Made by a program: the position numbers and the translations under genes. Source: Dimorphilus gyrociliatus (taxonomy: Eukaryota; Animalia; Annelida). From it: a DNA stretch of 64,000 nucleotides. Below are positions 5,719-21,133 of this stretch, in pieces. Location of the stretch: the NCBI GenBank assembly GCA_904063045.1, contig CAJFCJ010000012.1:2221709-2285708 (forward strand). The letters run 5' to 3'. Numbering within the stretch: the stretch's first letter is position 1; the number at the start of each line of letters is the position of its first letter. A model generated the notes under the pieces. It worked only from the letters and a program-made list of their open reading frames with translations, was not told the DNA's origin and searched no databases.

Positions 5719-7152
5719 ATGAATTCTCCTCTACAATACGTGTTCTTCGTTCTCTTCGCCCTAAATAGTGAATCTTTCGCAAAAATGGTTGAACCCTCGC
5801 AAAGTTATTGTTACTCTTCGGATATTAAACCAAACAGAAATTACGCTACGAAAACAACTTACTTCCAATCAATCAACTCCTCAAATAGTATTTTAGAAGA
5901 GTCGACCAATGATTCTAATTGTACTGTAAAATTTATCTATTATCTGAGCCGTCATGGTACTAGGCATAATGGAGATAAAGGTATACGAGAATGGCAACAA
6001 CATTTACCCAAACTCCGAGAACATATTTTAAAATTTCCCAATAAAACCCAACTTTGCCAGAAGGATATTGAAATTATCGCAAATTGGAGTTTGAGAATGA
6101 AGCCGGAAGATGATAAAGATTTGGTTGAAACCGGCAAAAGAGAACAAAAGTTTATCGCTCAGGAAATGAGAAAAAGATTCCCGGATTTCTTCGCTCAGAA
6201 TGATTTATTAGAAGATTACGAATTTCGTCATTCGAAAGAGAAGAGAACCCGTGATTCGGCTCTAGCCTTTCTCGAAGGCTTGTTTGGTACGTCAAATAAC
6301 GTTCAACTCACCAGATCACCCGAAAAAGATACTCTCTTACATTTCTACAAGCATTGCGATAAATATATTGAAGAAGTTCAAAATAAGCCCCGTATTGAAT
6401 ATGATAAATTCCTAAAGGGACCCGAGATGCAGGCAGTCATAAAAAGAGTGAACGAAAGACTGGCTTTAACAAATCCAATTGAATATAAAACACTTGAAAG
6501 TATCTATGATAATTGTGTGTTCGAGTATGGAATTTATAATGATGCTCCGTGGTGCTCAGTTTTCCAACGGGAAGATATAAACATCATAGAATATGCTGAA
6601 GATATAAAATATTACTGGGAGGATTCTTATCCTCATAAGGTCACTGTGGAACAAACTTGCAAGCTAGTCTCGGATATTTGGAAACATTTACGAAATGCAA
6701 AAGAAAAGAAAGATAAAAGGAAGATTGTTGGAAGATGGGCCCATTCGGCTACTATGAATACACTCTATACAAGATTGGGATTATATAAGGATGAGAAGCA
6801 ACTACTACATAACAACTACGAGCAGCAAAAGGATAGAAGATGGAGAACAACTTTACACACTCCGATGAGCTCAAGCATCGCTTTCGTTTTATTACAATGC
6901 AAAGATGATTTCACGGTTCGAGCTTTTCATATGGAAAAATTGATTAAACTGGACGGAATTTGCGCAGAAAAGAATTGTAAATGGAGTGAAATTGAAGGAA
7001 AATTTAAACCTATAGCGGACAATTGCAATTTTGAAGAGATATGTAAAGTATCTAAAGGGGATTCTTCCGCAATAGCGACAAAGCCTTTTATTCAATTAAT
7101 TACCCTAATGACTTTAATATCAATTTCATTACGAATGTTTTTTTATGTCTAA
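5719..7152 (+). CDS. MINPP1: Multiple inositol polyphosphate phosphatase-like histidine acid phosphatase, paralogue A, 477 aa, intronless
   Basis: Signal peptide; RHGTRH nucleophile motif; KRTRDSA; family-typical LETGKREQ, CVFEYG..PWCSVF, LEYAEDIKYYW and LGLYKD; hydrophobic C-terminal tail. Confidence 0.9.
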   Translation: MNSPLQYVFFVLFALNSESFAKMVEPSQSYCYSSDIKPNRNYATKTTYFQSINSSNSILEESTNDSNCTVKFIYYLSRHGTRHNGDKGIREWQQHLPKLREHILKFPNKTQLCQKDIEIIANWSLRMKPEDDKDLVETGKREQKFIAQEMRKRFPDFFAQNDLLEDYEFRHSKEKRTRDSALAFLEGLFGTSNNVQLTRSPEKDTLLHFYKHCDKYIEEVQNKPRIEYDKFLKGPEMQAVIKRVNERLALTNPIEYKTLESIYDNCVFEYGIYNDAPWCSVFQREDINIIEYAEDIKYYWEDSYPHKVTVEQTCKLVSDIWKHLRNAKEKKDKRKIVGRWAHSATMNTLYTRLGLYKDEKQLLHNNYEQQKDRRWRTTLHTPMSSSIAFVLLQCKDDFTVRAFHMEKLIKLDGICAEKNCKWSEIEGKFKPIADNCNFEEICKVSKGDSSAIATKPFIQLITLMTLISISLRMFFYV

Positions 7153-10991: not shown

Positions 10992-12768
10992 CTATATTTT
11001 ATCATTTACATTAAATGGTGATGTAGAATTTGAGGCATCGTTTAAACTTGGTATTAACTTGTTAATTTCTAATTGAATTAAATTTGTCCTCATTAAACTT
11101 TTTGGACTAGAACATGAAAGACTGTGTGGAGAAGGAAATTTTATCTTCTCAATCTTTAGCCACTCAACCAATGGCCGAATATTCACATCACAATACCAAT
11201 TATTATGAGTTACGTCAATAAGACCGAGATTAGGCAGTGTGTCCAAGAGTTCAGCCGGTAAATTACGCAATCCGTTATAGCTCAAGTTCATTTCTTGAAT
11301 GTTTGTCCATTTGGAGAGTACTGAAATATTTTTTAATAAGATTTCAGCTAATGTTGAAGAATTCGATAAACTTAAGATGAGCAATTTACTAGCATTCAAA
11401 TCCAATATAAATTCATTAACTGCAATCAAGAATTATGTAAAGAGTACTGATTACTTTGCAGTTCAAATATTTATTTTAGCTTTAGTTTACCCCAGTTGAT
11501 TTTTTTTTAGTTTGTAACCCCAATACTGCAAAGTTTATCATTACTCTGACTAATGTTTTGGATGGAATTCATGTGCAAAATTCTCAAGTTTGGTAATGAT
11601 CCAATGGATTGTAAAGAAGATATTGGATTCAACGACAGATCGAGAATTTGTAAGTTTTTCAGATATTGGAACGTGCCTGTCCGTAAGGCCGAAATTTGAT
11701 TATCCGATAAATCCAGAAGACGTAAATTACGTGCAGCATCAAAGGATTGTGACTGGATTTCGCTAATCCGATTCTTTTTTGCGTACAGACTCTCCAATTC
11801 GATCTGCAATAGCTCCTTGGATATTTTCTGTAATCTATTTCTGTTAATGTTAAGTAGTTTTGGAGAGTTTCTTGAGAAGATTGTTAATGATGTTAGATTG
11901 TTGTCATTTAAACGAACATTTAGAAAAGATATTTCAGATTCGCTTGATAAGTTTAATTGTTGAATGGAAGAGGAAGAGAGGTCTAAAACCTTTAAACTCA
12001 CTGAGGGTGCAAAGTTCAAGTTTAAAATTGAATTTAACAGATTCTTTCGCAAGTTCAACCTTCTTAGATCCCTTAAACATAAAAAGGCGTCGGGAGCAAT
12101 ATAGTTTATTTCGTTTTCTTCGAGGTTGATCACTGATAAAAGGAAATTGGACGCTTTTAAATAAGTTACTTCAACCTTGCTAGTTGTATATATTTGAAAA
12201 ACTTTTCTAAGCTACTCTTTTAGGAAAATAAATCGTAAAGCGTCTAATTTCCTTTCAAATTTGGATTCCCAACAAATTCCTCGCTACTTAACGATGTTAA
12301 GCGATTTCCAGCGGCAGAAAAATACAATAAATTTTCCAAATCCCGTAAAACTGCTTTCAAATCCGTTAATCGATTATCCGCCATATTTAAAGCTCTTAGA
12401 CGCCCCAAACCGGAAAAAGTATCATTATCCATAATCTTTGCCAACCTATTATCGGCTATCGATAAAGACGTCAGATTAGGACAAGCTTTGAAAATACGGT
12501 TATCGAGAGTGAAGATTTTGTTGGAATCGGCTACGATGTGTTTTAAATTGCTGAGTCGTCGCATACGACGCCAGTTTAAACGTCTAAGATAATTTTTAGC
12601 CAGGTTAATATATGTAAGATATTTAGGTAAGTTGGATGGCATTGCTTTGATCTGAGTTTGATCGCAGAAGGCCCTCCGGCGGATGCAAACGCATGGTTTT
12701 GGACAAGTGCTCAACGAATAATCAACCTTCGCTAGCAGAATGGAGAGGAGAAGGAATAAGAAACGCAT
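10992..12768 (-). CDS. Extracellular leucine-rich repeat protein (signal peptide, LRRNT, many LRRs, LRRCT), about 516 aa in a 3-exon model (12768-12252, 12132-11527, 11419-10992); first donor is non-canonical
   Basis: MRFLFLLLSILL signal; CPKPCVC LRRNT; repeated LxxLxLxxNxI; NNWYCD...CSSP LRRCT. Junction 1 needs a GA donor and junction 2 has two alternative readings, so the gene may be intact or a young pseudogene. Confidence 0.75.
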
Positions 12769-12964: not shown

Positions 12965-15900
12965 TGTAGTCATTCATTCGCACAGTTTCTCTTTTTCTAT
13001 CTACTGCGTTTTATTATTTTTCCATTTTCGCGCAGAAGCTTTGTCTACACGCATCCAGAGTCATACATCATCGAACAAACACAAAACATCAGTTCAATTT
13101 TACTTTTACCTCTATATATAAAGAACAACTGACCTTACAAGTCTATTTTAAGCTTTGCCCATTTAATAAACGTATACTTTATATTATTGTTGACAACCTT
13201 GAAAGAGAAAAAAAATTATTCTGTTTATAATCTATATTTATAATTATAAAGATATCTTAAGCCAATTTACATCATTCTACAACCATTTGGTAAAGATCTA
13301 TCTAGGGATTTTTGCGCATATAAAACAAAGTTTATTCGTAAATGGTTGTGAAAGGAGAAATATAAGGAAATTTAAGGAAATATAAGTGAAAAGAAAAAAA
13401 GGGAAGGAAAAAGAATGATTCAAATTAACTTGAATGAAAGAATATTTAAATAAACGAATGCAATAAATTCAATTTTAAGAGGAAAAAAGAGACCTTTTTC
13501 CTTTTTTTTTACAGATTTTTTAAATTCATAAGGGATCGAGGATTCATGTAAATTTTATGTCGTTTGGGAAACGTTAGGAATTTATTCCCTTTTTGCTTGT
13601 TTATTAGAAGAGCATATATATATATATATATATAAATTTTATATATATATATACTGTATATATACCGCATATGTCTCTACAATATACTATTTCTTATATA
13701 GTACAAAGACGCTATTAGCAGAGAAAAATTTCTCTTAGATGGATAAAAAAAATAAGACAATTGCATAAATAGAAGATTAATATAATAATCCTTTGATGCA
13801 ATTAATATGGTGTAAATACTGCTTATACTGCATATATAAACTATCTACTGTATATTTGACTATAGATTTTATACTACTATTTATATATTCTTTATTATAC
13901 ATTGAATATAAATAAGATGCTAAGAGTCTGAATATACAACTATCTTTAGAATAGTAGAATGTTACAATAGAACCTTTATACGTCTTTTATCTATTTCTCT
14001 TGTTTTAGACCCTTGTTACAGGAAAATAGAACCTTGCATAAATTTATTATTAAATGTATAGAAGGCAATTTGTTATTGTCAAGAAAATCCCACGTGACAA
14101 TACACATCTGACAAGAGGGCAATGAAAACCTTTTTCGTACGTTTTCCTCTCCTATCGTAAAATTCTCGCCTTTTTCATCTTGGCACGATTCTGACTAAAT
14201 GCTACACTCTAATTTATAGTCTACTTTTCCCAGCTTTTTACAATCCGACGCCCCATATGCTGATCGAACAAGCTGAAATTAAAATGCTATTCGGGAAAGG
14301 ACTCGTAACTAGCTTTTTGATTTTGCTCTCGCTCTCCCTCTCTCTCTCTCTCTCTCTTTTTCTCTCTCTCTTTTCTCTTCAGACAGTTTTTGCTATAAAC
14401 TCTTATTATTCTTATAGAAAGCCCATTTCATTTATCCTACATTTATCAGCCTAATTTATATATTATTCATAAACAAGTAATTTACTTAAATATTCCTTCT
14501 ATTAGACACCTGAATGTTATACCTTCGCCGATGTATGGTATTTAAAGCGACTCCATTAGGATAATAAAAATGAAAAATTAACGCGTTAATCCCTATAATC
14601 GATAGCAATCCTTCTTAATGCTTAGCTTATAAACCAATGTATCATTTTCATTGCCTTGTTTAAGAAAGGACTCATAGAAAGTTTGTTTTTTAATAAATAA
14701 ATATTAAAAGAGGGTTACCCACTCCTGTTGGCTCTACATTGTGTTATATAAACTATAGGAAACAATTTGCTATAAACATACTGTTTGTACTGTTTGCTAT
14801 AGAGTAAAATATCTATAATAGTAATAGTGTTGCTTACTATGTTCTATATAGGTTTGCTTACAATAGCTAAACATCTTGTGGTGAAAAATTAGCTTTTGGC
14901 ATTCTATAATTAAGTATTTATGATTTATTGATCCCAGAAGCATCAATCCTTTTACTTTTAAAAGAAATGTAGTTAAAAGGGTTGCAGAAAAAATAAAAGA
15001 AAAATAAAAATAACTTTAGATCAGTCAACTATTTTATAATTAAAGGCGTCTCTTCTCTTAATCATTTCAATAATAAAACACCCTTGGCTAATTAAAATTC
15101 CTTCCATTAACTATAGAATATTCATAAAAAATCATACTAATTGAGTTTACAAAGTTTACAGTTTCGTTGATAATATAGAATATTTCAAAAACAAAATAAG
15201 CTTAATGATTAATAAATATTAATATTTACTTACTTAAATAGTAAAATATTTATTCGAGCTTTCACAGCCTTTCTTCTTTCTCTTTAAATGAATATCTTAA
15301 ATTGATTTTTCGCTCCTTTCTCTATTGTTTTTTTGTTCTTAGTTTCTTCTTTTCTTATTCTAGTTTTTCTTCTCTTACCTTGTCTCTCTTTTTACAGCTC
15401 CCGCACATTTATTGCTGTCGTCTTTTGGTCTAGTCCGGGCTAGAAAGGAATGAGGGAAAATATAAATTATCAATAGAGGGCGCTTTTGTTCCATGATTGT
15501 TACTGTTCATTGGAGCGATGAGTTTGTTTGTCGCTTTTTATGATATTGAATATTTCAATAAATTAACTTGTTAGTATCTCTAATTATGATGCTCAGCCAT
15601 CTGTAAAATTGTTCTATGACTGATTTCTCTGTGTACTTGAACGCAATCTGGAAGCATCGCTCGACCGATTGAAATTGCTGCAATCGTTTGTGTTTATTGA
15701 GCGGAAGGAGCAACGATTGCTATTATAAAAAATATAAGCGATAGATGGCGCTGAACAGAGAAGTTTTACCCTCCTTGTCACCTCGTATGGCCCTGTCAAT
15801 TTTTCCAAGAATTAGCATTAGTGAAAAATTGAAAATAAGGATAAGTAGGAAGAGAGACTTTAACCAGCAATCTATCAAAAATTTGAATAAAGCGAATAAC

Positions 15901-16863
15901 TATTTAATTCCGTAGAAATTGATATATAAATAGATTCGGGATATAGATGAGCACTTGTACGTTCCTTAATTACTTTCGAGAAATTATCGACGATGCGAAA
16001 GTAGAAGGAAATCGATACTTGAATCACGTTGTTAAATACTACTTAACGCTTTCCTTTTCGTAATGAGAAGAAGATTTTCGATGAAAAAAAAAATTCCTTC
16101 ATCTAATCTAGAACATTTCGTGCAATGAGAAATTTGGAAGAAGAAACGAAAACGGAAGGATAGAGATAGAGTAAAAATGTAACATAGCATTAAATTAAAT
16201 CTCTTCTTCAATCGTCTTTTATAGCAGAATAGTTACAAAAAAAAATCCTTTTCAACATTCTATCCGAATTTACTTTCATTTTCCAACCGCAAAAAAAAAA
16301 CAATTACTAAAAGTTTTTTTTATCTCGAAGAAGAGTCGAATAGAGGATGCAAATGCTTAAAAGATAATCTTAACTCTGTGAGTGAAAATAAGAAGAGATT
16401 TTGGAATATATAGATAGAGAGAATGAAAGAGAGTGAGGGGAGGGGGGAGGACTGTTAGGAAACGAAGAAGAGAGGAGGATACATCGTGGAAAAGAAGGAA
16501 TATCCACTATAAGCTTAATTTATATAAAGTAATTACTTTTAGTTGAATAATAATAGCAACAAAAAATTCACTTTTTTGTTAAACTTGAATTTGAATATAT
16601 ATGAAATTGTATATAAAATATTTAGTATATTATATATACAGTATGCTTTTAAACTCATTTGCACCCAGGTGTCGTGTAACATGTGCAACAACAGTCATTC
16701 TTTTGAAAGGAAAAAATATACTATATGATCATTCAAATGTAGATTATTGACTACATAACATTTATAACTCCTCTTATGTAGACGTTTAAGTTTAGTGATT
16801 AATAAGTAAGCGTATCCTTGTACTGGAATATAGATTCGTGTATAATACTATGATACTTACATT

Positions 16864-18960
16864 ATGGGATTAAATCCGTCGAGATATCTTGCCGAAAAGC
16901 AGCAAACTTACTCGGAGAGAAAGCAGTTGCTCAAAAAATACCTGATCCGTCTTATTCCCTACGAACTACACGCTCAATATTCGATTAGTGGTACGGCAAT
17001 CACGATACAATGTTGCAGTAGAGACGCTACTAGTTGGTGGATGAATACATTAAGGAAATCTTATCCATTAAGGTAAGAACCAGCTTTGGATTCCTAGTAG
17101 ATCTGATAAATATAATCTTTTGAGTTGCTTGAATAATATCAATAAAGGGTTTATGCTTAGGAAAAGTAATTATATCAAATTGTGCATTGTATAGAATTTT
17201 TGTCGGTTAGACACACCTTTTGCCGGCTTAACTACGTTTTACTTTATCCCGAAGACGATGTTATTTTGAAGGTTGATAGGAGAGATGGAAGCTTAATAAT
17301 TGCAGGCAAAGATCACTGGGAATGGTTTCTATGTAATTTTGAAACGGTGCTAGAAAAAGGACTAAATGACTGCCCTTGCAAATTGGCCTTTTCTGCCGGT
17401 AAAAAAGAAAATAGAATTATTTATTTATCTTTCATAGTGAAATAGTAAAATATTGCTCCCTTATCTTCTTTATTCTAATTTTATTATTTCTTTCTATCTT
17501 ATGGAAAGGGAAAGGAGAAGGAAATATCAATAGAACTATTTAATCAATTAATACAAAAGCCGTTCAATCAATAACTCCAACTTTAGAAATAAAAAGGCAA
17601 ATGAACTCGGCGTAGGCTATTAGCGTACTTTTCTCAACGAGTAAAAGAGTTGGAGATTAATTTTTATCCTCCCTGATTGAATGAAAGTAGAGATTAAACA
17701 GTCTAAATTGATAAAAGAAAAAGGAACTATATAAGAAGTGGAAAAGTACGCGTTGTATATATAGATGGATACCCTTAAGATATGAATATATATATACAGT
17801 ATATATATATAATATATATATATGAAGAGAGCTAAATATAGCAGTGATTTCATATTTATATATAGATAAAGATAATGGTGTATGCGCTCAAATGTTAAAT
17901 TTTCACAAAACAAAAGAGTATTTTTTTTCACAGATTTTCGATTATTATTGAAATTAGATTATAAAATTATATTACTTTTTTCAGTTTTTTGTACATATTT
18001 CAACGCCAGAGGGAGTAAAAGTTTTACTTACCAACATCGCCTGCACTTGTTTCTATCAGATTAAAGTGAAGCGTATAGAGTCGATTTTAGTAATTGAAGT
18101 AAAACTCTCTTTCTCCTTTTCTTCCTCTCTTCTCTCTTTCTCTCTTTCTCTCTCTCATTCTCTTTCTATCTATCTAGTACATATCATATCATTTGAAATT
18201 AATTTACCATAGGGATACTTTTTTATCTTAGGAGATATGATAATAAGTTCTAAATCTACATGAATATTGCTGTAGGTGTAAACTAAATTTTCTTGGATTG
18301 ATTAAAGATTACATTTGCTTCGAATTCAGACACACAATAAATCTCAGTTTTCTTTTAGCTATTAACCACGAATTACTTTTGGGCGATGGAACGAAAGCAA
18401 GCGACATGCAAGCTTTTCTACCAGTTTCCGGTTGTATAAGACATGGTCCTGGTTTTATCTATAGACTCTGGAAAGGAATGATGGATGAGTGGCTGTATAG
18501 AGGGGGTACTGTTTTTATAGTATCGCCATTAATTGATGCTAGACGAGTGGCTGACATATTACTTCTTCTGGTGAAGCATGCATCAAAGACAAACAACTGT
18601 AAAGTAAAAATGCTTTGTCTTGAACAATGCGATGGAAGATGGAATTTTAATAAAATATTTGCAACTGCCAAAAATAAAGTGTTAGGGGTCAAGGGCCCTA
18701 ATGGAAGAAGACTAGTTAGAGGATACAGATTAAATTACGGAATTAACGACAGGCTAGAGGTAAAACACGCCAACTTTCATTGTAAATTAATTGCCCATAT
18801 GAGATCGGATGGAATAGTAGATATATTGCTGACAAGCGCAAATTTCCATAGATGGCACTTGGACGTTGATAATGGAGATTTTGTACAAAAGATAACATTG
18901 ACAATGGATCAATTTAATAAGAATTACTTACAACATATAGGATTTCTGGCTACTCTTTAA
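16864..18960 (+). CDS. PLD-superfamily (single HKD-type) nuclease/phosphodiesterase-like protein with an uncharacterised N-terminal domain, 332 aa, 3 exons (16864-17072, 17211-17398, 18359-18960)
   Basis: Donors GTAAGA (17073) and GTAAAA (17399); acceptors ending 17210 and 18358; phases 2 and 1 match. The C-terminal domain has VFIVSPLID, FHCKLIA, ILLTSANF and a downstream NGD, the H-x-K / S-x-N / N-x-acid pattern of Nuc/Zucchini/Tdp1-type enzymes. Confidence 0.75.
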
Positions 18961-19284
18961 TTTTTTCTTTTTGTTTTTTTTTACTTAATCTCTTCTAAAT
19001 CACACTTCTTACTCTAATATCTACTTATAAGCTCCTTTTTCTCTCCCTCTTCTCCCCTCTCACCGCTCCCTAAACCCTCCCATCCCCCCTCCTCTTTCCT
19101 TTGCGTAATTCTTACATGTATTAAACGTAAAAGACTATTTCAAAAATGTAAATATATAGATTATAAATGTTTTATTTAAAAATATCTTTCTTCTTAAAGA
19201 ATAAGAAAAGAGTTTAATGGGAAAAAGAATAATTTTCTTTTAAAATCATTAAATTAAAATGTTTCTTTTTTAATATGTTTTCTC

Positions 19285-20856
19285 TCAAATCAACAAATAT
19301 TTCATTAAAAATGGTAATATGATTATTATTTTAGAATAAAATATTAAATTTTCCGAACTATTTTTATCGACTTTGCAGATTTTCTCAAAATTGCAGTTAT
19401 CCGATATCGGTTTAAATACTTTTTCAATTTCATTCCAGTCGCAGTCAATTTCTTTACAAATTCCTTCTAATTTTATAGTTTTTTCATTATGATACACTCT
19501 TACTTTATAGTTGGTATCACAGCGAAGTAGGACAAAAGCTATGTTACAGCTCATTGGTGATATTAAAGTCATCTTCCATTTTCTTTTTAAATGTTCCTTA
19601 TAATTGCTATGTAAAAGTTGTTTTTCATCCTTGAACAAACCTAATCTTGTATAGAGCATATTTATCGCAGGAAGGTGGGTCCACCTACCGACAATCTTCT
19701 GCTTCGAACCACTTTTAGCTAAACTTAATTTTTTCCATATATCTCTAGTTAATTCACATGTTTGTTCATAAGATATTTTATGAGGATAGGAATCTCTCCA
19801 AAATGATTGAAGATCATTGGCGTATTCAAGAACATCCAAATCATTTGGTTCTAATAGGCTACACCAAGGAGCATCACCGTATATGCCATATTCAAAGGAA
19901 CAGCTTTCGTGTAGTAATTTTAAGGTATTGAAAGAAATTTGACTATTTTTGCCAAGCTTTCTAGTTACTTTCCTTAGGACTTCCGCAATTTCTGGTCTTT
20001 TAATAAATTTATCATATTCCACTAGTGATTTATTAGATACTGTAGCTTCATACTTGTCACAATGCCTGTAGAATCTAAGTAGAGTATCATTTTGGGGTGG
20101 TTCTTTAAGAGTGATATTTTTTGCAGTGTTTTCATCGAATAGGCCAGTTAGAAATGCTTTAGCAGAATCTCTATTCCTTCTTTCGGAAGTTGGACGAAAT
20201 TCGCTCTCGTCGAGAACTGAAGGATTTTCAAAGAACTTCTTAAATCTATTTTTAATCTGTCGTCCTGAAAGAGATATATAGATTAATAAATTATTAAATA
20301 GAGAGAGAGAAAGAGAAAGAGCGAGAGAATATAGTTAATAATAGGTATCATGACCAATGAGTTACAGAAAAGTGGATAAGAAGCCACTATCTGTTTATTT
20401 ATTTTCTGATGAGATAATACTTTCTGGTTATAATGTAAATAAATCGAAACCTATATAGATTTGTTCTTGTCGACCGGTTTCCACTAATTTGAATGCATCT
20501 TCCGGATTCATTCTTGGAAACCATTTATTTATCAAATCAATATCCTCTCGACATAATCCTGTAATTGAAGGATTTTCAAGAATATTTCGTTGGAATGACG
20601 GAAAATGTCTGTGCCAAAGTCTTATAGAGTTTCGATTGTTTTGTCTCGTTCCATGCCTAGACAGGAAGTAGAAATATTCAACTGAGCAATTATTCTGAAC
20701 ATTCTCTTCCGCCTTTTTCTTTGAATTTAGTGACTCTGCGTAGGACGTTTTATCGGCATAATTTCTTTTTGGAGAGTTATCCGTTCCGTAGCAATAATTT
20801 CCGTAGATGGGTGTCGATATGATCAAATTTGTAAGGATTACACACAACAACCTCAT
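19285..20856 (-). CDS. MINPP1: MINPP1-like histidine acid phosphatase, paralogue B, about 461 aa, 2 exons (20856-20451, 20264-19285)
   Basis: The true ATG is MRLLCVIL at 20856 (the track's 20871 start is TTG). RHGTRQ motif; collinear with paralogue A throughout; 186-nt phase-1 GT-AG intron; hydrophobic C-terminal tail. Confidence 0.9.
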
Positions 20857-21133
20857 TCTGCAGTATTTCAATATAAATATTCCTTAAGCGATGCTGTATA
20901 AAACTTTTGATATGATTAAAAATCATGTTAATCGAATTGCGGGATAAGATACAAATGATAAGAGATAATATTTGAAGTCGTAGATCATTATATTATCGAA
21001 GAAAATCGTGTTAATATTTAAAGTTCATTGTGTAATGGACAAACTACATGATCATTGTGGCTTTATTATTTATTTCCTTTTATCTTAGATATCAATAGGC
21101 AAATGTAAATTATGTTTTTTGTTATTTGTTTTT

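What the first reader, a model, noticed from the sequence alone, without database searches (positions are those of the whole stretch)
16864..18960. Uncharacterised single-HKD PLD-family nuclease-like gene with a novel N-terminal domain
Seen: three phase-compatible exons give 332 aa. The C-terminal domain has IVSPLID, H-C-K, T-S-A-N and N-G-D but lacks the D of HxKxxxxD and the G of GSxN. There is no signal peptide and no N-terminal membrane anchor. Established: single-motif HKD proteins (bacterial Nuc, BfiI/NgoFVII-type restriction nucleases, Zucchini/PLD6) dimerise to form one active site, and Tdp1 has similarly degenerate HxK...TSN motifs. This protein matches neither Zucchini (no anchor, different motif context) nor two-motif Tdp1, PLD1-5 or DNase II. 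Inference: an undescribed animal HKD nuclease/phosphodiesterase. The N-terminal region (SWWMNTLRKSYP...LKVDRRDGSLIIAGKDHWEWF) loosely recalls TBP-like nucleic-acid-binding folds. Candidate roles are nucleic-acid defence, small-RNA processing or DNA-adduct repair, possibly of horizontal origin with later intron gain.
Basis: partly seen in the sequence, partly recalled or inferred. Interest (0 to 1): 0.75.

Follow-up and report, generated by a model that had tools for sequence, protein, structure and literature searches.

The report
Expressed PLD-fold nuclease-like gene, uncharacterised family
This is a real, spliced and strongly conserved animal gene for a two-part protein (a probable TBP-like nucleic-acid-binding head and a phospholipase-D-fold tail that keeps a Tdp1/BfiI-style His-Lys-Asn site), and it belongs to an unstudied family seen so far only in marine invertebrates, so it is a good candidate for a new nuclease or phosphodiesterase.

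Summary
Spliced contigs from three runs join the exons exactly at 17072/17211 and 17398/18359 (GT..AG). dN/dS against a related species is 0.044. No exon hits Pfam, NCBIfam, PHROGs, PADLOC or PDB sequences.

An exhaustive phmmer search found 63 representative relatives. Every named one is an "uncharacterized protein" of a brachiopod, nemertean, annelid, mollusc, hemichordate or amphioxus.

The N-terminal domain is conserved across the family. Four weak but concordant lines link it to the TBP-like domains of RnlA and RNase HIII. An amphioxus gene model carries an RNase H1 hybrid-binding domain in its place.

Caveat: only 32 of 62 members keep H, K and N. In this gene's own clade, 9 of 11 have lost at least one, as has a second paralogue in this genome. 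Catalysis is therefore plausible here but unproven. Recent horizontal origin is not supported.

The joined protein was never built; exons were handled apart.

The parts
16864..17072 (+). Exon 1. It begins at the ATG (16864) and encodes the first 69 codons plus 2 nt. This is the first half of the N-terminal domain, up to the conserved WW..TL...YP helix. The protein starts MGLNPS.
   Evidence: An in-frame TAA lies at 16843. Spliced contigs end this exon at 17072. dN/dS is 0.035 against L001. It aligns with the N-domains of Lingula, Tubulanus and other relatives.
17073..17210 (+). Intron 1 (138 nt, GTAAGA...TTAG).
   Evidence: The joint 17072/17211 is seen in X1, X3 and X5. Identity to L001 is 64%.
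17211..17398 (+). Exon 2. It encodes the second half of the N-terminal domain: a beta-hairpin (V.LKV..DGSLIIAGK) followed by a helix (HWEWF..F..L).
   Evidence: dN/dS is 0.126. In relatives this is the stretch that matches RnlA residues 103-185 (PF15935) and DUF3378.
17399..18358 (+). Intron 2 (960 nt, GTAAAA...TTTTAG). It holds conserved islands and CT-rich low-complexity sequence.
   Evidence: The joint 17398/18359 is seen in X1, X3 and X5. Overall identity to L001 is 51%, with an island of about 90% identity near 18042-18128. There is no Rfam match of note.
18359..18960 (+). Exon 3. It encodes the whole PLD-fold domain (199 codons from 18361) and the stop TAA (18958-18960).
18517..18546 (+). 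The IVSPLIDARR stretch. P56, D59 and R62 (exon-3 numbering) are among the most conserved residues of the family, and D59 is invariant.
18775..18786 (+). F-H-C-K, the HxK half of the putative active site (H140, K142).
   Evidence: Family consensus is FHxKFIA. The motif lies at the predicted dimer interface. In relatives it falls inside the stretches that match PLDc_2, RE_NgoFVII and Tyr-DNA_phospho below threshold.
18832..18858 (+). T-S-A-N-F-H-R-W-H. T158, S159, A160 and F162 are nearly invariant. N161 is the putative catalytic Asn. H166 is conserved (35 of 47 sequences).
   Evidence: Residues 157-160 and 166 touch H140 and K142 of the other copy in the dimer model.

Best explanation
The locus is an expressed three-exon gene for a 332-residue soluble protein with two domains.

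Shown: the gene is spliced as predicted and is under strong purifying selection. Its C-terminal 199 residues adopt the phospholipase-D (PLD/HKD) superfamily fold. It belongs to an uncharacterised family found in spiralians, hemichordates and amphioxus.

Inferred, C-terminal domain: two copies pair as in Nuc, Zucchini and BfiI, so that two H140-x-K142...T-S-A-N161 motifs (Tdp1/BfiI-like, without the Asp of HxKxxxxD) build one site. One His attacks a phosphodiester to form a covalent phospho-histidine intermediate. The other His protonates the leaving group. No metal is needed.

Inferred, N-terminal domain: it is a TBP-like module of the RNase HIII-N / RnlA-NRD type that brings the enzyme to nucleic acid, most likely RNA:DNA hybrids or other duplex or structured substrates.

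Inferred, family: it also contains many members that lost the catalytic residues, including a paralogue in this genome. These presumably bind but do not cut.
For: Gene model:
- Joints 17072/17211 and 17398/18359 (GT..AG) appear in spliced contigs of X1, X3 and X5.
- Exon/intron conservation contrasts against L001.
- dN/dS is 0.044, with dS 0.74.

Family:
- 63 representatives at E<1e-3, 29 at E<1e-10.
- Named members come from Lingula, Tubulanus, Owenia, Sinanodonta, Argopecten, Haliotis, Mercenaria, Ptychodera, Saccoglossus and Branchiostoma.

Fold:
- AF2 with the family alignment gives pLDDT 94.4 and pTM 0.90.
- Foldseek finds 93 PDB chains at E<=1e-3, and the 50 listed are almost all PLD-superfamily entries.
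- Atlas structural neighbours are bacterial PLDc_2 and NgoFVII nuclease domains, often fused to helicases.
- Relatives hit PLDc_2 just below the cut-off (22.9 bits against 27), and also RE_NgoFVII and Tyr-DNA_phospho weakly, over the HxK..TSAN stretch.

Dimer:
- ipSAE is 0.41 against a best control of 0.00. That mark was reached by 21 of 30 solved homodimers and 0 of 23 solved monomers.
- Partner pLDDT is at least 83, and the runs agree in 100% of contacts.
- The interface comprises residues 138-143, 157-160, 166 and 171-174.

Catalytic residues:
- H, K and N are all kept in 32 of 62 members.
- Their losses are coupled: N is present in 33 of 40 members with H, but in only 3 of 22 without H. 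This is the pattern of an enzyme family with inactive offshoots.
- This protein keeps all three, plus H166.

N-terminal domain:
- It is conserved across the family.
- The nearest named ESM-feature cluster is RnlA_toxin (0.85, 183 shared features). Atlas structural matches to DUF3378/RNase HIII clusters reach TM 0.47-0.54.
- hhalign against E. coli RnlA gives E 0.003, and against a 5-sequence RnlA alignment E 0.0017. Both align at RnlA 103-185, which is PF15935.
- Among all of Pfam, the weak hits of N-domains include PF15935 (E 0.073) and PF11858 (E 0.12).
- The RNase HIII TBP-like domain binds DNA-RNA hybrids (PMC3710099, PMC3597702).

Independent hint: the amphioxus model P0077 has an RNase H1 hybrid-binding domain (PF01693, E 2e-18) in front of an intact family domain.
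Against: - No activity has been measured for any member.
- In the tree, this gene's clade (11 rows, support 100/100) has 9 members that lost H, K or N. Only this protein and its 96%-identical relative keep all three. Catalysis is therefore dispensable in close kin.
- The strongest family-wide conservation lies outside the triad: W37, W44, P56, D59, R62, T-S-A-x-F.
- The best single structural match is the pseudo-enzyme FAM83A, although it is tied within about 1 Z with true nucleases.
- The dimer pass may come from the model's memory of solved PLD dimers.
- Every line of evidence for the N-domain fold is individually sub-threshold (hhalign probability 10-15%). No structure of the N-domain was predicted here.
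- The amphioxus fusion is an unverified gene model. The RefSeq model of the same locus (P0047) lacks it.
Confidence: 0.5

Rival explanations
1. The protein is a non-catalytic PLD-fold protein (pseudo-enzyme). The domain would serve as a dimeric binding or scaffold module for a protein, a nucleic acid or a phosphorylated ligand, as in FAM83 DUF1669, MITD1 or TrmB. The retained His, Lys and Asn would then be a leftover, or would be used only for binding.
For: - 9 of 11 members of this gene's clade and 30 of 62 family members lack at least one of H, K or N.
- The second paralogue in this genome (contig C6) has none of the three: it reads F-A-S-S-F and V-T-S-V-S-F.
- The most conserved residues are not the catalytic ones.
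Against: - This protein keeps H140, K142, N161 and H166, with dN/dS 0.03 in exon 3.
- The losses of H and N are strongly coupled across the family. This implies that the intact triad is selected as a unit where it is kept.
- About 1.2 substitutions per site separate this protein from its clade's ancestor, so chance retention of all three is unlikely.
Confidence: 0.3
2. The protein is an active PLD-superfamily enzyme whose substrate is not a nucleic-acid backbone. Candidates are a phospholipid head group, polyphosphate or a nucleotide derivative. It might act at a membrane reached through N-myristoylation.
For: - The superfamily includes phospholipases, cardiolipin and phosphatidylserine synthases and polyphosphate kinase domains, all of which are among the structural matches.
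- The N-terminus MGLNPS fits the myristoylation consensus (Gly2, Ser6), and the relative keeps it as MGINPS.
Against: - Single-domain PLD members of this size are nucleases (Nuc, NucT, Zucchini, BfiI, NgoAVII, SauUSI) and stand among the closest matches.
- The N-domain points to TBP-like nucleic-acid binders.
- The amphioxus paralogue carries an RNase H1 hybrid-binding domain.
- The MG start is not conserved in orthologues of other phyla.
Confidence: 0.12
3. The gene is a recent horizontal acquisition from a bacterium or phage that later gained introns.
For: - The nearest ESM-feature clusters are unnamed phage clusters, at scores of 0.94-0.95.
- Outside the family, the structural neighbours are bacterial restriction-type PLD nucleases.
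Against: - The family is present, with the same two-domain layout, in brachiopods, nemerteans, annelids and molluscs. The C-domain is also found in hemichordates and amphioxus.
- No named bacterial or viral protein is among the 63 hits.
- The two introns are conserved in a relative.
- A second, distant paralogue sits elsewhere in the genome.
- Any transfer would have to predate the bilaterian radiation.
Confidence: 0.03

Closest known systems
Single-HKD PLD-superfamily nucleases (Nuc of pKM101, NucT, Zucchini/PLD6)
   Different: No signal peptide (Nuc, NucT) and no mitochondrial anchor (Zucchini). No Asp at His+7. T-S-A-N in place of G-S-x-N. The His-to-Asn spacing is 21 residues rather than 17. 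There is no Pfam PLDc/PLDc_2 hit. It has an extra N-terminal domain.
Restriction-type PLD nucleases BfiI, NgoAVII/NgoFVII and SauUSI
   Different: Those are bacterial, with B3-like or helicase partners on the C-terminal side. Here the partner domain is N-terminal and TBP-like. Relatives hit RE_NgoFVII only at E 0.03-0.05.
Tyrosyl-DNA phosphodiesterase 1 (Tdp1)
   Different: Tdp1 has two HKN repeats in one chain and works as a monomer. This protein has one repeat and should need a dimer. There is no Pfam PF06087 membership.
FAM83 DUF1669 domain (pseudo-PLD scaffold for CK1)
   Different: There is no sequence relation (no PF07894 hit). This protein keeps H, K and N. The domain order and partner domain differ.
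TBP-like N-terminal domains of RNase HIII (DUF3378, PF11858) and RnlA/LsoA (PF15935, PF19417)
   Same: The N-terminal domain shares the hairpin-plus-helix signature (G-x-L-x-I-x-G ... W/Y-F ... L) and the size, and it sits in front of a nuclease-type domain. In RNase HIII this domain binds DNA-RNA hybrids (PMC3710099).
   Different: All similarity scores are below family thresholds. The partner here is a PLD fold, not RNase H or HEPN.

Membership tests
PLD (HKD) superfamily | PLD alpha/beta sandwich fold | tested here: met
PLD (HKD) superfamily | Canonical motif HxK(x)4D(x)6G(G/S)xN | tested here: not met
   H140, K142 and N161 are present. However, Met stands at His+7 instead of Asp, Thr stands instead of Gly, and the His-to-Asn spacing is 21 residues. 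Only the reduced H-K-N form is met, as in Tdp1 and BfiI.
PLD (HKD) superfamily | Pfam PLDc / PLDc_2 at the gathering score | tested here: not met
   No hit for the window protein at E<=10. 5 of 47 relatives hit PLDc_2; the best is 22.9 bits against a cut-off of 27.
Single-HKD nucleases (Nuc/Zucchini type) | A homodimer that builds one active site from two motifs | tested here: inconclusive
   The dimer model passes: 0.41 against a best control of 0.00. That mark was reached by 21 of 30 solved homodimers and 0 of 23 monomers. Motif residues lie at the interface. This is a prediction only and may reflect memory of solved PLD dimers.
Single-HKD nucleases (Nuc/Zucchini type) | Metal-independent phosphodiester hydrolysis through a phospho-histidine intermediate | not testable with these tools
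   Needs an enzyme assay with a His mutant.
Zucchini / PLD6 | N-terminal mitochondrial membrane anchor | tested here: not met
   No hydrophobic N-terminus. The highest KD(19) in exon 1 is 0.60.
Tdp1 | Two HKN repeats in one chain; Pfam PF06087 | tested here: not met
   One repeat only. No PF06087 hit for the window protein.
FAM83 (DUF1669) | Pfam DUF1669 membership, with the domain at the N-terminus | tested here: not met
   No Pfam hit in the window protein or in 47 relatives. The domain is C-terminal here.
TBP-like domain of RNase HIII / RnlA (PF11858, PF15935) | Family-level sequence match | tested here: inconclusive
   No hit for the window's exons. Relatives score E 0.073 (PF15935) and E 0.12 (PF11858), both below the cut-offs. 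hhalign gives E 0.0017-0.003 at probability 10-15%.
TBP-like domain of RNase HIII / RnlA (PF11858, PF15935) | TBP-like (helix-grip) fold | tested here: inconclusive
   The Atlas's own model of the Lingula relative matches DUF3378/RNase HIII clusters at TM 0.47-0.54.

The most novel reading that the evidence does not exclude
The family is an ancient bilaterian nuclease system, lost from vertebrates and ecdysozoans. A dimeric PLD-fold phosphodiesterase is aimed at RNA:DNA hybrids or duplex nucleic acids by interchangeable hybrid-binding heads: TBP-like in spiralians, RNase H1 HBD in amphioxus. It would work in antiviral or anti-transposon defence or in R-loop processing, with catalytically dead paralogues acting as regulators or sensors.
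Probability: 0.2. Interest if true: 0.8.

Novelty: new variant of a known kind. Interest (0 to 1): 0.55.

Why it matters
Animals are known to use only a handful of PLD-fold nucleic-acid enzymes: Zucchini in piRNA biogenesis, PLD3/4 in endolysosomal nucleic-acid clearance, Tdp1 in adduct repair and DNase II.

This would be a further, structurally distinct branch, with a domain pairing (TBP-like head plus single PLD domain) that I did not find described in the searched literature. The family is absent from the standard model animals among the named hits, which would explain why it has gone unstudied.

The family shows repeated loss of the catalytic triad, one intact and one dead copy in this compact genome, and several paralogues in Lingula. 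That pattern makes it a natural system for studying how enzymes turn into pseudo-enzymes. It is also compatible with a conflict or immunity role.

The hypothesis is directly testable with one recombinant protein and a His mutant.

Tried and rejected
- Pfam, NCBIfam, PHROGs and PADLOC scans of each exon gave nothing usable. The hits were Tautomerase_2 at E 0.21 and phrog_27470 at E 0.41, both treated as noise.
- PDB sequence searches found no PLD hit, either with exon 3 or with the family profiles. A2 gave only chance hits at E>0.3, and A5 gave none.
- Single-sequence AF2 of exon 3 failed (pLDDT 36.9). It was superseded by the alignment-based model.
- The word-index protein search found only the 96%-identical relative with the single sequence, and 8 proteins with the profile. 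It added no taxa.
- hhalign of the family against a single E. coli ClsA sequence was uninformative (E 0.17).
- DUF3378 against the own genome gave only a chance-level hit with stops on another contig.
- Rfam on 15000-19500 gave only a mir-297 hit at E 0.62 in an AT repeat, which I rejected.
- Literature searches for a description of this family found none.
- I rejected Zucchini, Tdp1, Nuc and FAM83 orthology (see the membership test), and I rejected recent HGT.
- I did not do the joined 332-residue protein step.
Full report
**The observation**

The window is AT-rich (31.5% GC). It carries ordinary animal genes: a cytoplasmic dynein-2 heavy chain, an ETS factor, LRR proteins, GPCR-like ORFs and two MINPP-like histidine phosphatases. 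It lies in a 77.9-Mb assembly.

At the stated coordinates, three open pieces translate cleanly. These are 16864-17072, 17211-17398 and 18359-18960. Their lengths sum to 999 nt, which gives 332 codons plus TAA. The ATG at 16864 is preceded by an in-frame TAA at 16843. The intron ends are GTAAGA...TTAG and GTAAAA...TTTTAG.

Exon 3 holds the quoted motifs: IVSPLID, FHCK, TSANF and NGD. It has no Asp at His+7 and has Thr where GSxN has Gly. There is no hydrophobic N-terminus or TM-like segment.

**Is it a real gene?**

Yes, on three grounds.

- Splicing. Contigs of four public runs were laid on 16600-19200. One 1281-nt contig (X1) and one 1204-nt contig (X3), both from a relative, cross both junctions. 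Short contigs of X5, with no differences from the window, do the same. The junctions are exactly 17072/17211 and 17398/18359, with GT..AG ends.
- Depth pattern. In X5, summed contig depth is 107-214 over exons and 7-40 over introns. This is the pattern of an RNA sample, although contig depth is a poor measure.
- Conservation. A 2.6-kb genomic contig of a relative (L001) has gap-free exons at 85-89% identity and gapped introns at 51-64%. Counted exon by exon, dS is 0.74 and dN is 0.033, so dN/dS is 0.044. By exon the ratios are 0.035, 0.126 and 0.030.

All searches, alignments and folds used the exons separately, by reference.

**Relatives**

No exon hits Pfam, NCBIfam, PHROGs, PADLOC or PDB sequences. 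The word-index search found only the 96%-identical relative.

The exhaustive phmmer search of 1.84 billion representatives found 63 proteins at E<1e-3 and 29 at E<1e-10. Every hit that carries a name is an "uncharacterized" or "hypothetical" protein of a marine or aquatic invertebrate:

- Lingula anatina, at several loci
- Tubulanus polymorphus
- Owenia fusiformis
- Sinanodonta woodiana
- Argopecten irradians
- Haliotis species
- Mercenaria mercenaria
- Ptychodera flava
- Saccoglossus kowalevskii
- Branchiostoma lanceolatum

The gene is therefore a member of an unstudied family spread across Spiralia and the invertebrate deuterostomes. I found no paper that describes it.

A profile search of the window's own genome found a second, distant copy on contig C6. 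It has both domains in one open frame.

**C-terminal domain**

With the 47-sequence alignment A2, AlphaFold2 gives pLDDT 94.4 and pTM 0.90. The single-sequence attempt had failed.

Foldseek finds 93 PDB chains at E<=1e-3. The 50 listed rows are almost all PLD-superfamily entries, the exceptions being three rows whose titles I did not check.

The ESM Atlas shape search returns the family's own mollusc cluster first (TM 0.76). After that come bacterial PLDc_2 and NgoFVII nuclease domains, many of them fused to helicases.

At the sequence level, five relatives hit PLDc_2 just under the cut-off. Others hit RE_NgoFVII and Tyr-DNA_phospho weakly. All of these hits lie over the FHxK...TSANF stretch.

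So the fold claim is confirmed. The motif is the reduced H-K-N form known from Tdp1 and BfiI (my own knowledge of those enzymes), not the canonical HKD.

**Dimer**

A two-copy model scored ipSAE 0.41, 0.39 and 0.44, against 0.00 for three controls. This passes a mark reached by 21 of 30 solved homodimers and 0 of 23 solved monomers. Partner pLDDT was at least 83, and the runs agreed in 100% of contacts.

The interface is made of residues 21-28, 138-143 (F-H-C-K), 157-160 (L-T-S-A), H166, 171-180 and 184-193. H140 and K142 of one copy touch S159, A160, H166 and 171-174 of the other. This is the geometry expected for a single-HKD enzyme.

The tool warns that such a pass can come from memory of solved relatives. 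I treat it as support, not proof.

**Are the catalytic residues under selection?**

Across 62 members that cover the motif, H, K and N are all present in 32. The losses are coupled. N is present in 33 of 40 members that have His, but in only 3 of 22 that lack it. These counts are not corrected for relatedness.

An ML tree (48 rows) splits the family into two clades, each with 100/100 support.

- This gene's clade has 11 rows, of which 9 are degenerate. They include the Lingula (N-R-G) and Tubulanus (N-N-A) two-domain proteins and the closest 40-43% relatives (H-K-S, Q-K-N).
- The other clade has 23 intact and 14 degenerate rows.

The tree needs at least 5-8 changes of state. The paralogue in this genome reads F-A-S-S-F and V-T-S-V-S-F, so it has none of the three residues.

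The family's most constant residues are W37, W44, P56, D59 (invariant), R62, T158, S159, A160 and F162.

My reading is that the ancestor was an enzyme and that many lineages made inactive derivatives. The window's protein has kept the full triad plus H166 along a long branch, under dN/dS 0.03. That favours activity but does not show it.

**N-terminal domain**

The Lingula, Tubulanus and two unnamed relatives align with exon 1 (..I.I.S.D...WW..T....YP.D) and exon 2 (V.LKL...DG.L.I.GK.H..WF...F...L). The longer proteins of Owenia, Lingula, Tubulanus, Sinanodonta, Argopecten and Haliotis have the same domain in a more elaborate form.

Four weak but concordant results link it to the TBP-like domains of RnlA/LsoA and RNase HIII:

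- The nearest named ESM-feature cluster is RnlA_toxin, at 0.85 with 183 shared features.
- The Atlas's own model of the Lingula protein matches DUF3378/RNase HIII clusters at TM 0.47-0.54.
- hhalign of the N-domain alignment against E. coli RnlA gives E 0.003. Against a five-member RnlA/LsoA alignment it gives E 0.0017. Both align the hairpin-helix of exon 2 to RnlA 103-185. Pfam calls that region PF15935.
- Scanned against all 24,736 Pfam models, the few weak hits of twelve N-domains include exactly PF15935 (E 0.073, Sinanodonta) and PF11858/DUF3378 (E 0.12, Tubulanus), at the same hairpin.

[quoted passage not shown] It is reported to bind DNA-RNA hybrids, and the same type of domain precedes the RNase LS HEPN domain (PMC3710099).

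The fold assignment therefore stays a well-supported lead.

**An independent hint on substrate**

One amphioxus gene model (P0077, 327 aa) carries an RNase H1 N-terminal hybrid-binding domain (PF01693, E 2e-18). A low-complexity linker follows, and then an intact family domain with FHCK, TSANF and HHF.

Two unrelated hybrid- or duplex-binding heads on the same tail would point to nucleic acid as the target. However, the RefSeq model of the same locus lacks the head, and I could not check it with reads.

**Synthesis**

Shown:
- an expressed, spliced and constrained gene;
- a PLD-fold C-terminal domain;
- membership of an uncharacterised invertebrate family with a conserved N-terminal partner domain.

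Inferred:
- a Nuc-like dimer with a composite H-K-N site working through a phospho-histidine intermediate;
- a TBP-like targeting domain;
- a nucleic-acid substrate, perhaps RNA:DNA hybrids.

The main rival is a non-catalytic binding role, as in FAM83. This is favoured by the degenerate triads of close kin and of the in-genome paralogue. A lipid or polyphosphate substrate is less likely, and recent horizontal transfer is unlikely.

I rate the enzyme reading at 0.5, the pseudo-enzyme reading at 0.3, another substrate at 0.12 and recent HGT at 0.03.

**Comparison with the known, and novelty**

The protein works most like the single-domain PLD nucleases (Nuc, Zucchini, BfiI/NgoAVII, the SauUSI nuclease domain), with a Tdp1-like motif. 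It fails the membership tests of each of these families:

- no canonical HKD motif and no Pfam hit;
- no anchor or signal peptide;
- one repeat rather than two;
- a different partner domain.

It is best filed as a new family and domain architecture within a known superfamily. Database entries exist for relatives, but only as uncharacterised proteins.

The notes returned by the search of earlier findings concern other genes and did not affect this reading.

Noticed in passing
window 15381-15439 and 16861-16890, with the intron 15440-16860 on the minus strand: Contigs of X5 and X1 join 15439 directly to 16861. On the + strand the skipped part is CT..AC, which makes it a minus-strand intron with a good donor (GTAAGT) and acceptor (CTTTCTAG). 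So a minus-strand transcript has an exon overlapping at least the first 30 nt of this gene's coding region, antisense to it. It may be a 5' exon of the LRR gene at 10992-12768 or an unannotated antisense RNA. The unstranded assembly merged it with the + strand mRNA in X1.
   Followed up: partly
G000:C6:1607041-1608147 (minus); loci L011 and L012: A second, distant family member lies in the same genome. Both domains sit in one open frame of about 378 aa. The catalytic His, Lys and Asn are all replaced (F-A-S-S-F, V-T-S-V-S-F). One TAG is reported inside the C-domain match. It may be a pseudo-enzyme or a decaying copy. Its expression is unknown.
   Followed up: partly
window 18042-18128 (also about 17525-17560 and 17590-17650), inside intron 2: These are islands of about 90% identity to the relative's contig L001, inside an intron that is otherwise 51% identical. 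There is no Rfam match and no open frame. They could be a regulatory element, a small RNA or an alternative exon.
   Followed up: partly
window 16864-16881: The protein starts MGLNPS (MGINPS in the relative), which fits the N-myristoylation consensus (Gly2, Ser6). The motif is not conserved in orthologues of other phyla.
   Followed up: no
protein P0077 (Branchiostoma lanceolatum CAH1250222.1): This gene model fuses an RNase H1 hybrid-binding domain (PF01693, E 2e-18) to an intact family PLD-like domain. The RefSeq model of the same locus (P0047) has a different, short N-terminus. The fusion has not been verified.
   Followed up: partly
window 17262-17465: A 204-nt contig from a coral metatranscriptome (run X4) matches with one mismatch and runs unspliced from exon 2 into intron 2. 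So this animal, or a very close relative, is present in that coral sample.
   Followed up: no
window 5719-7152 (+) and 19285-20871 (-): Two paralogous MINPP-like histidine acid phosphatase genes flank the region in opposite orientation. The second lies tail to tail with the gene studied here.
   Followed up: no
window 18100-18170 and 19040-19100: CT-rich and C-rich low-complexity tracts lie in intron 2 and just downstream of the stop codon. The reads tool skipped them as repeats.
   Followed up: no
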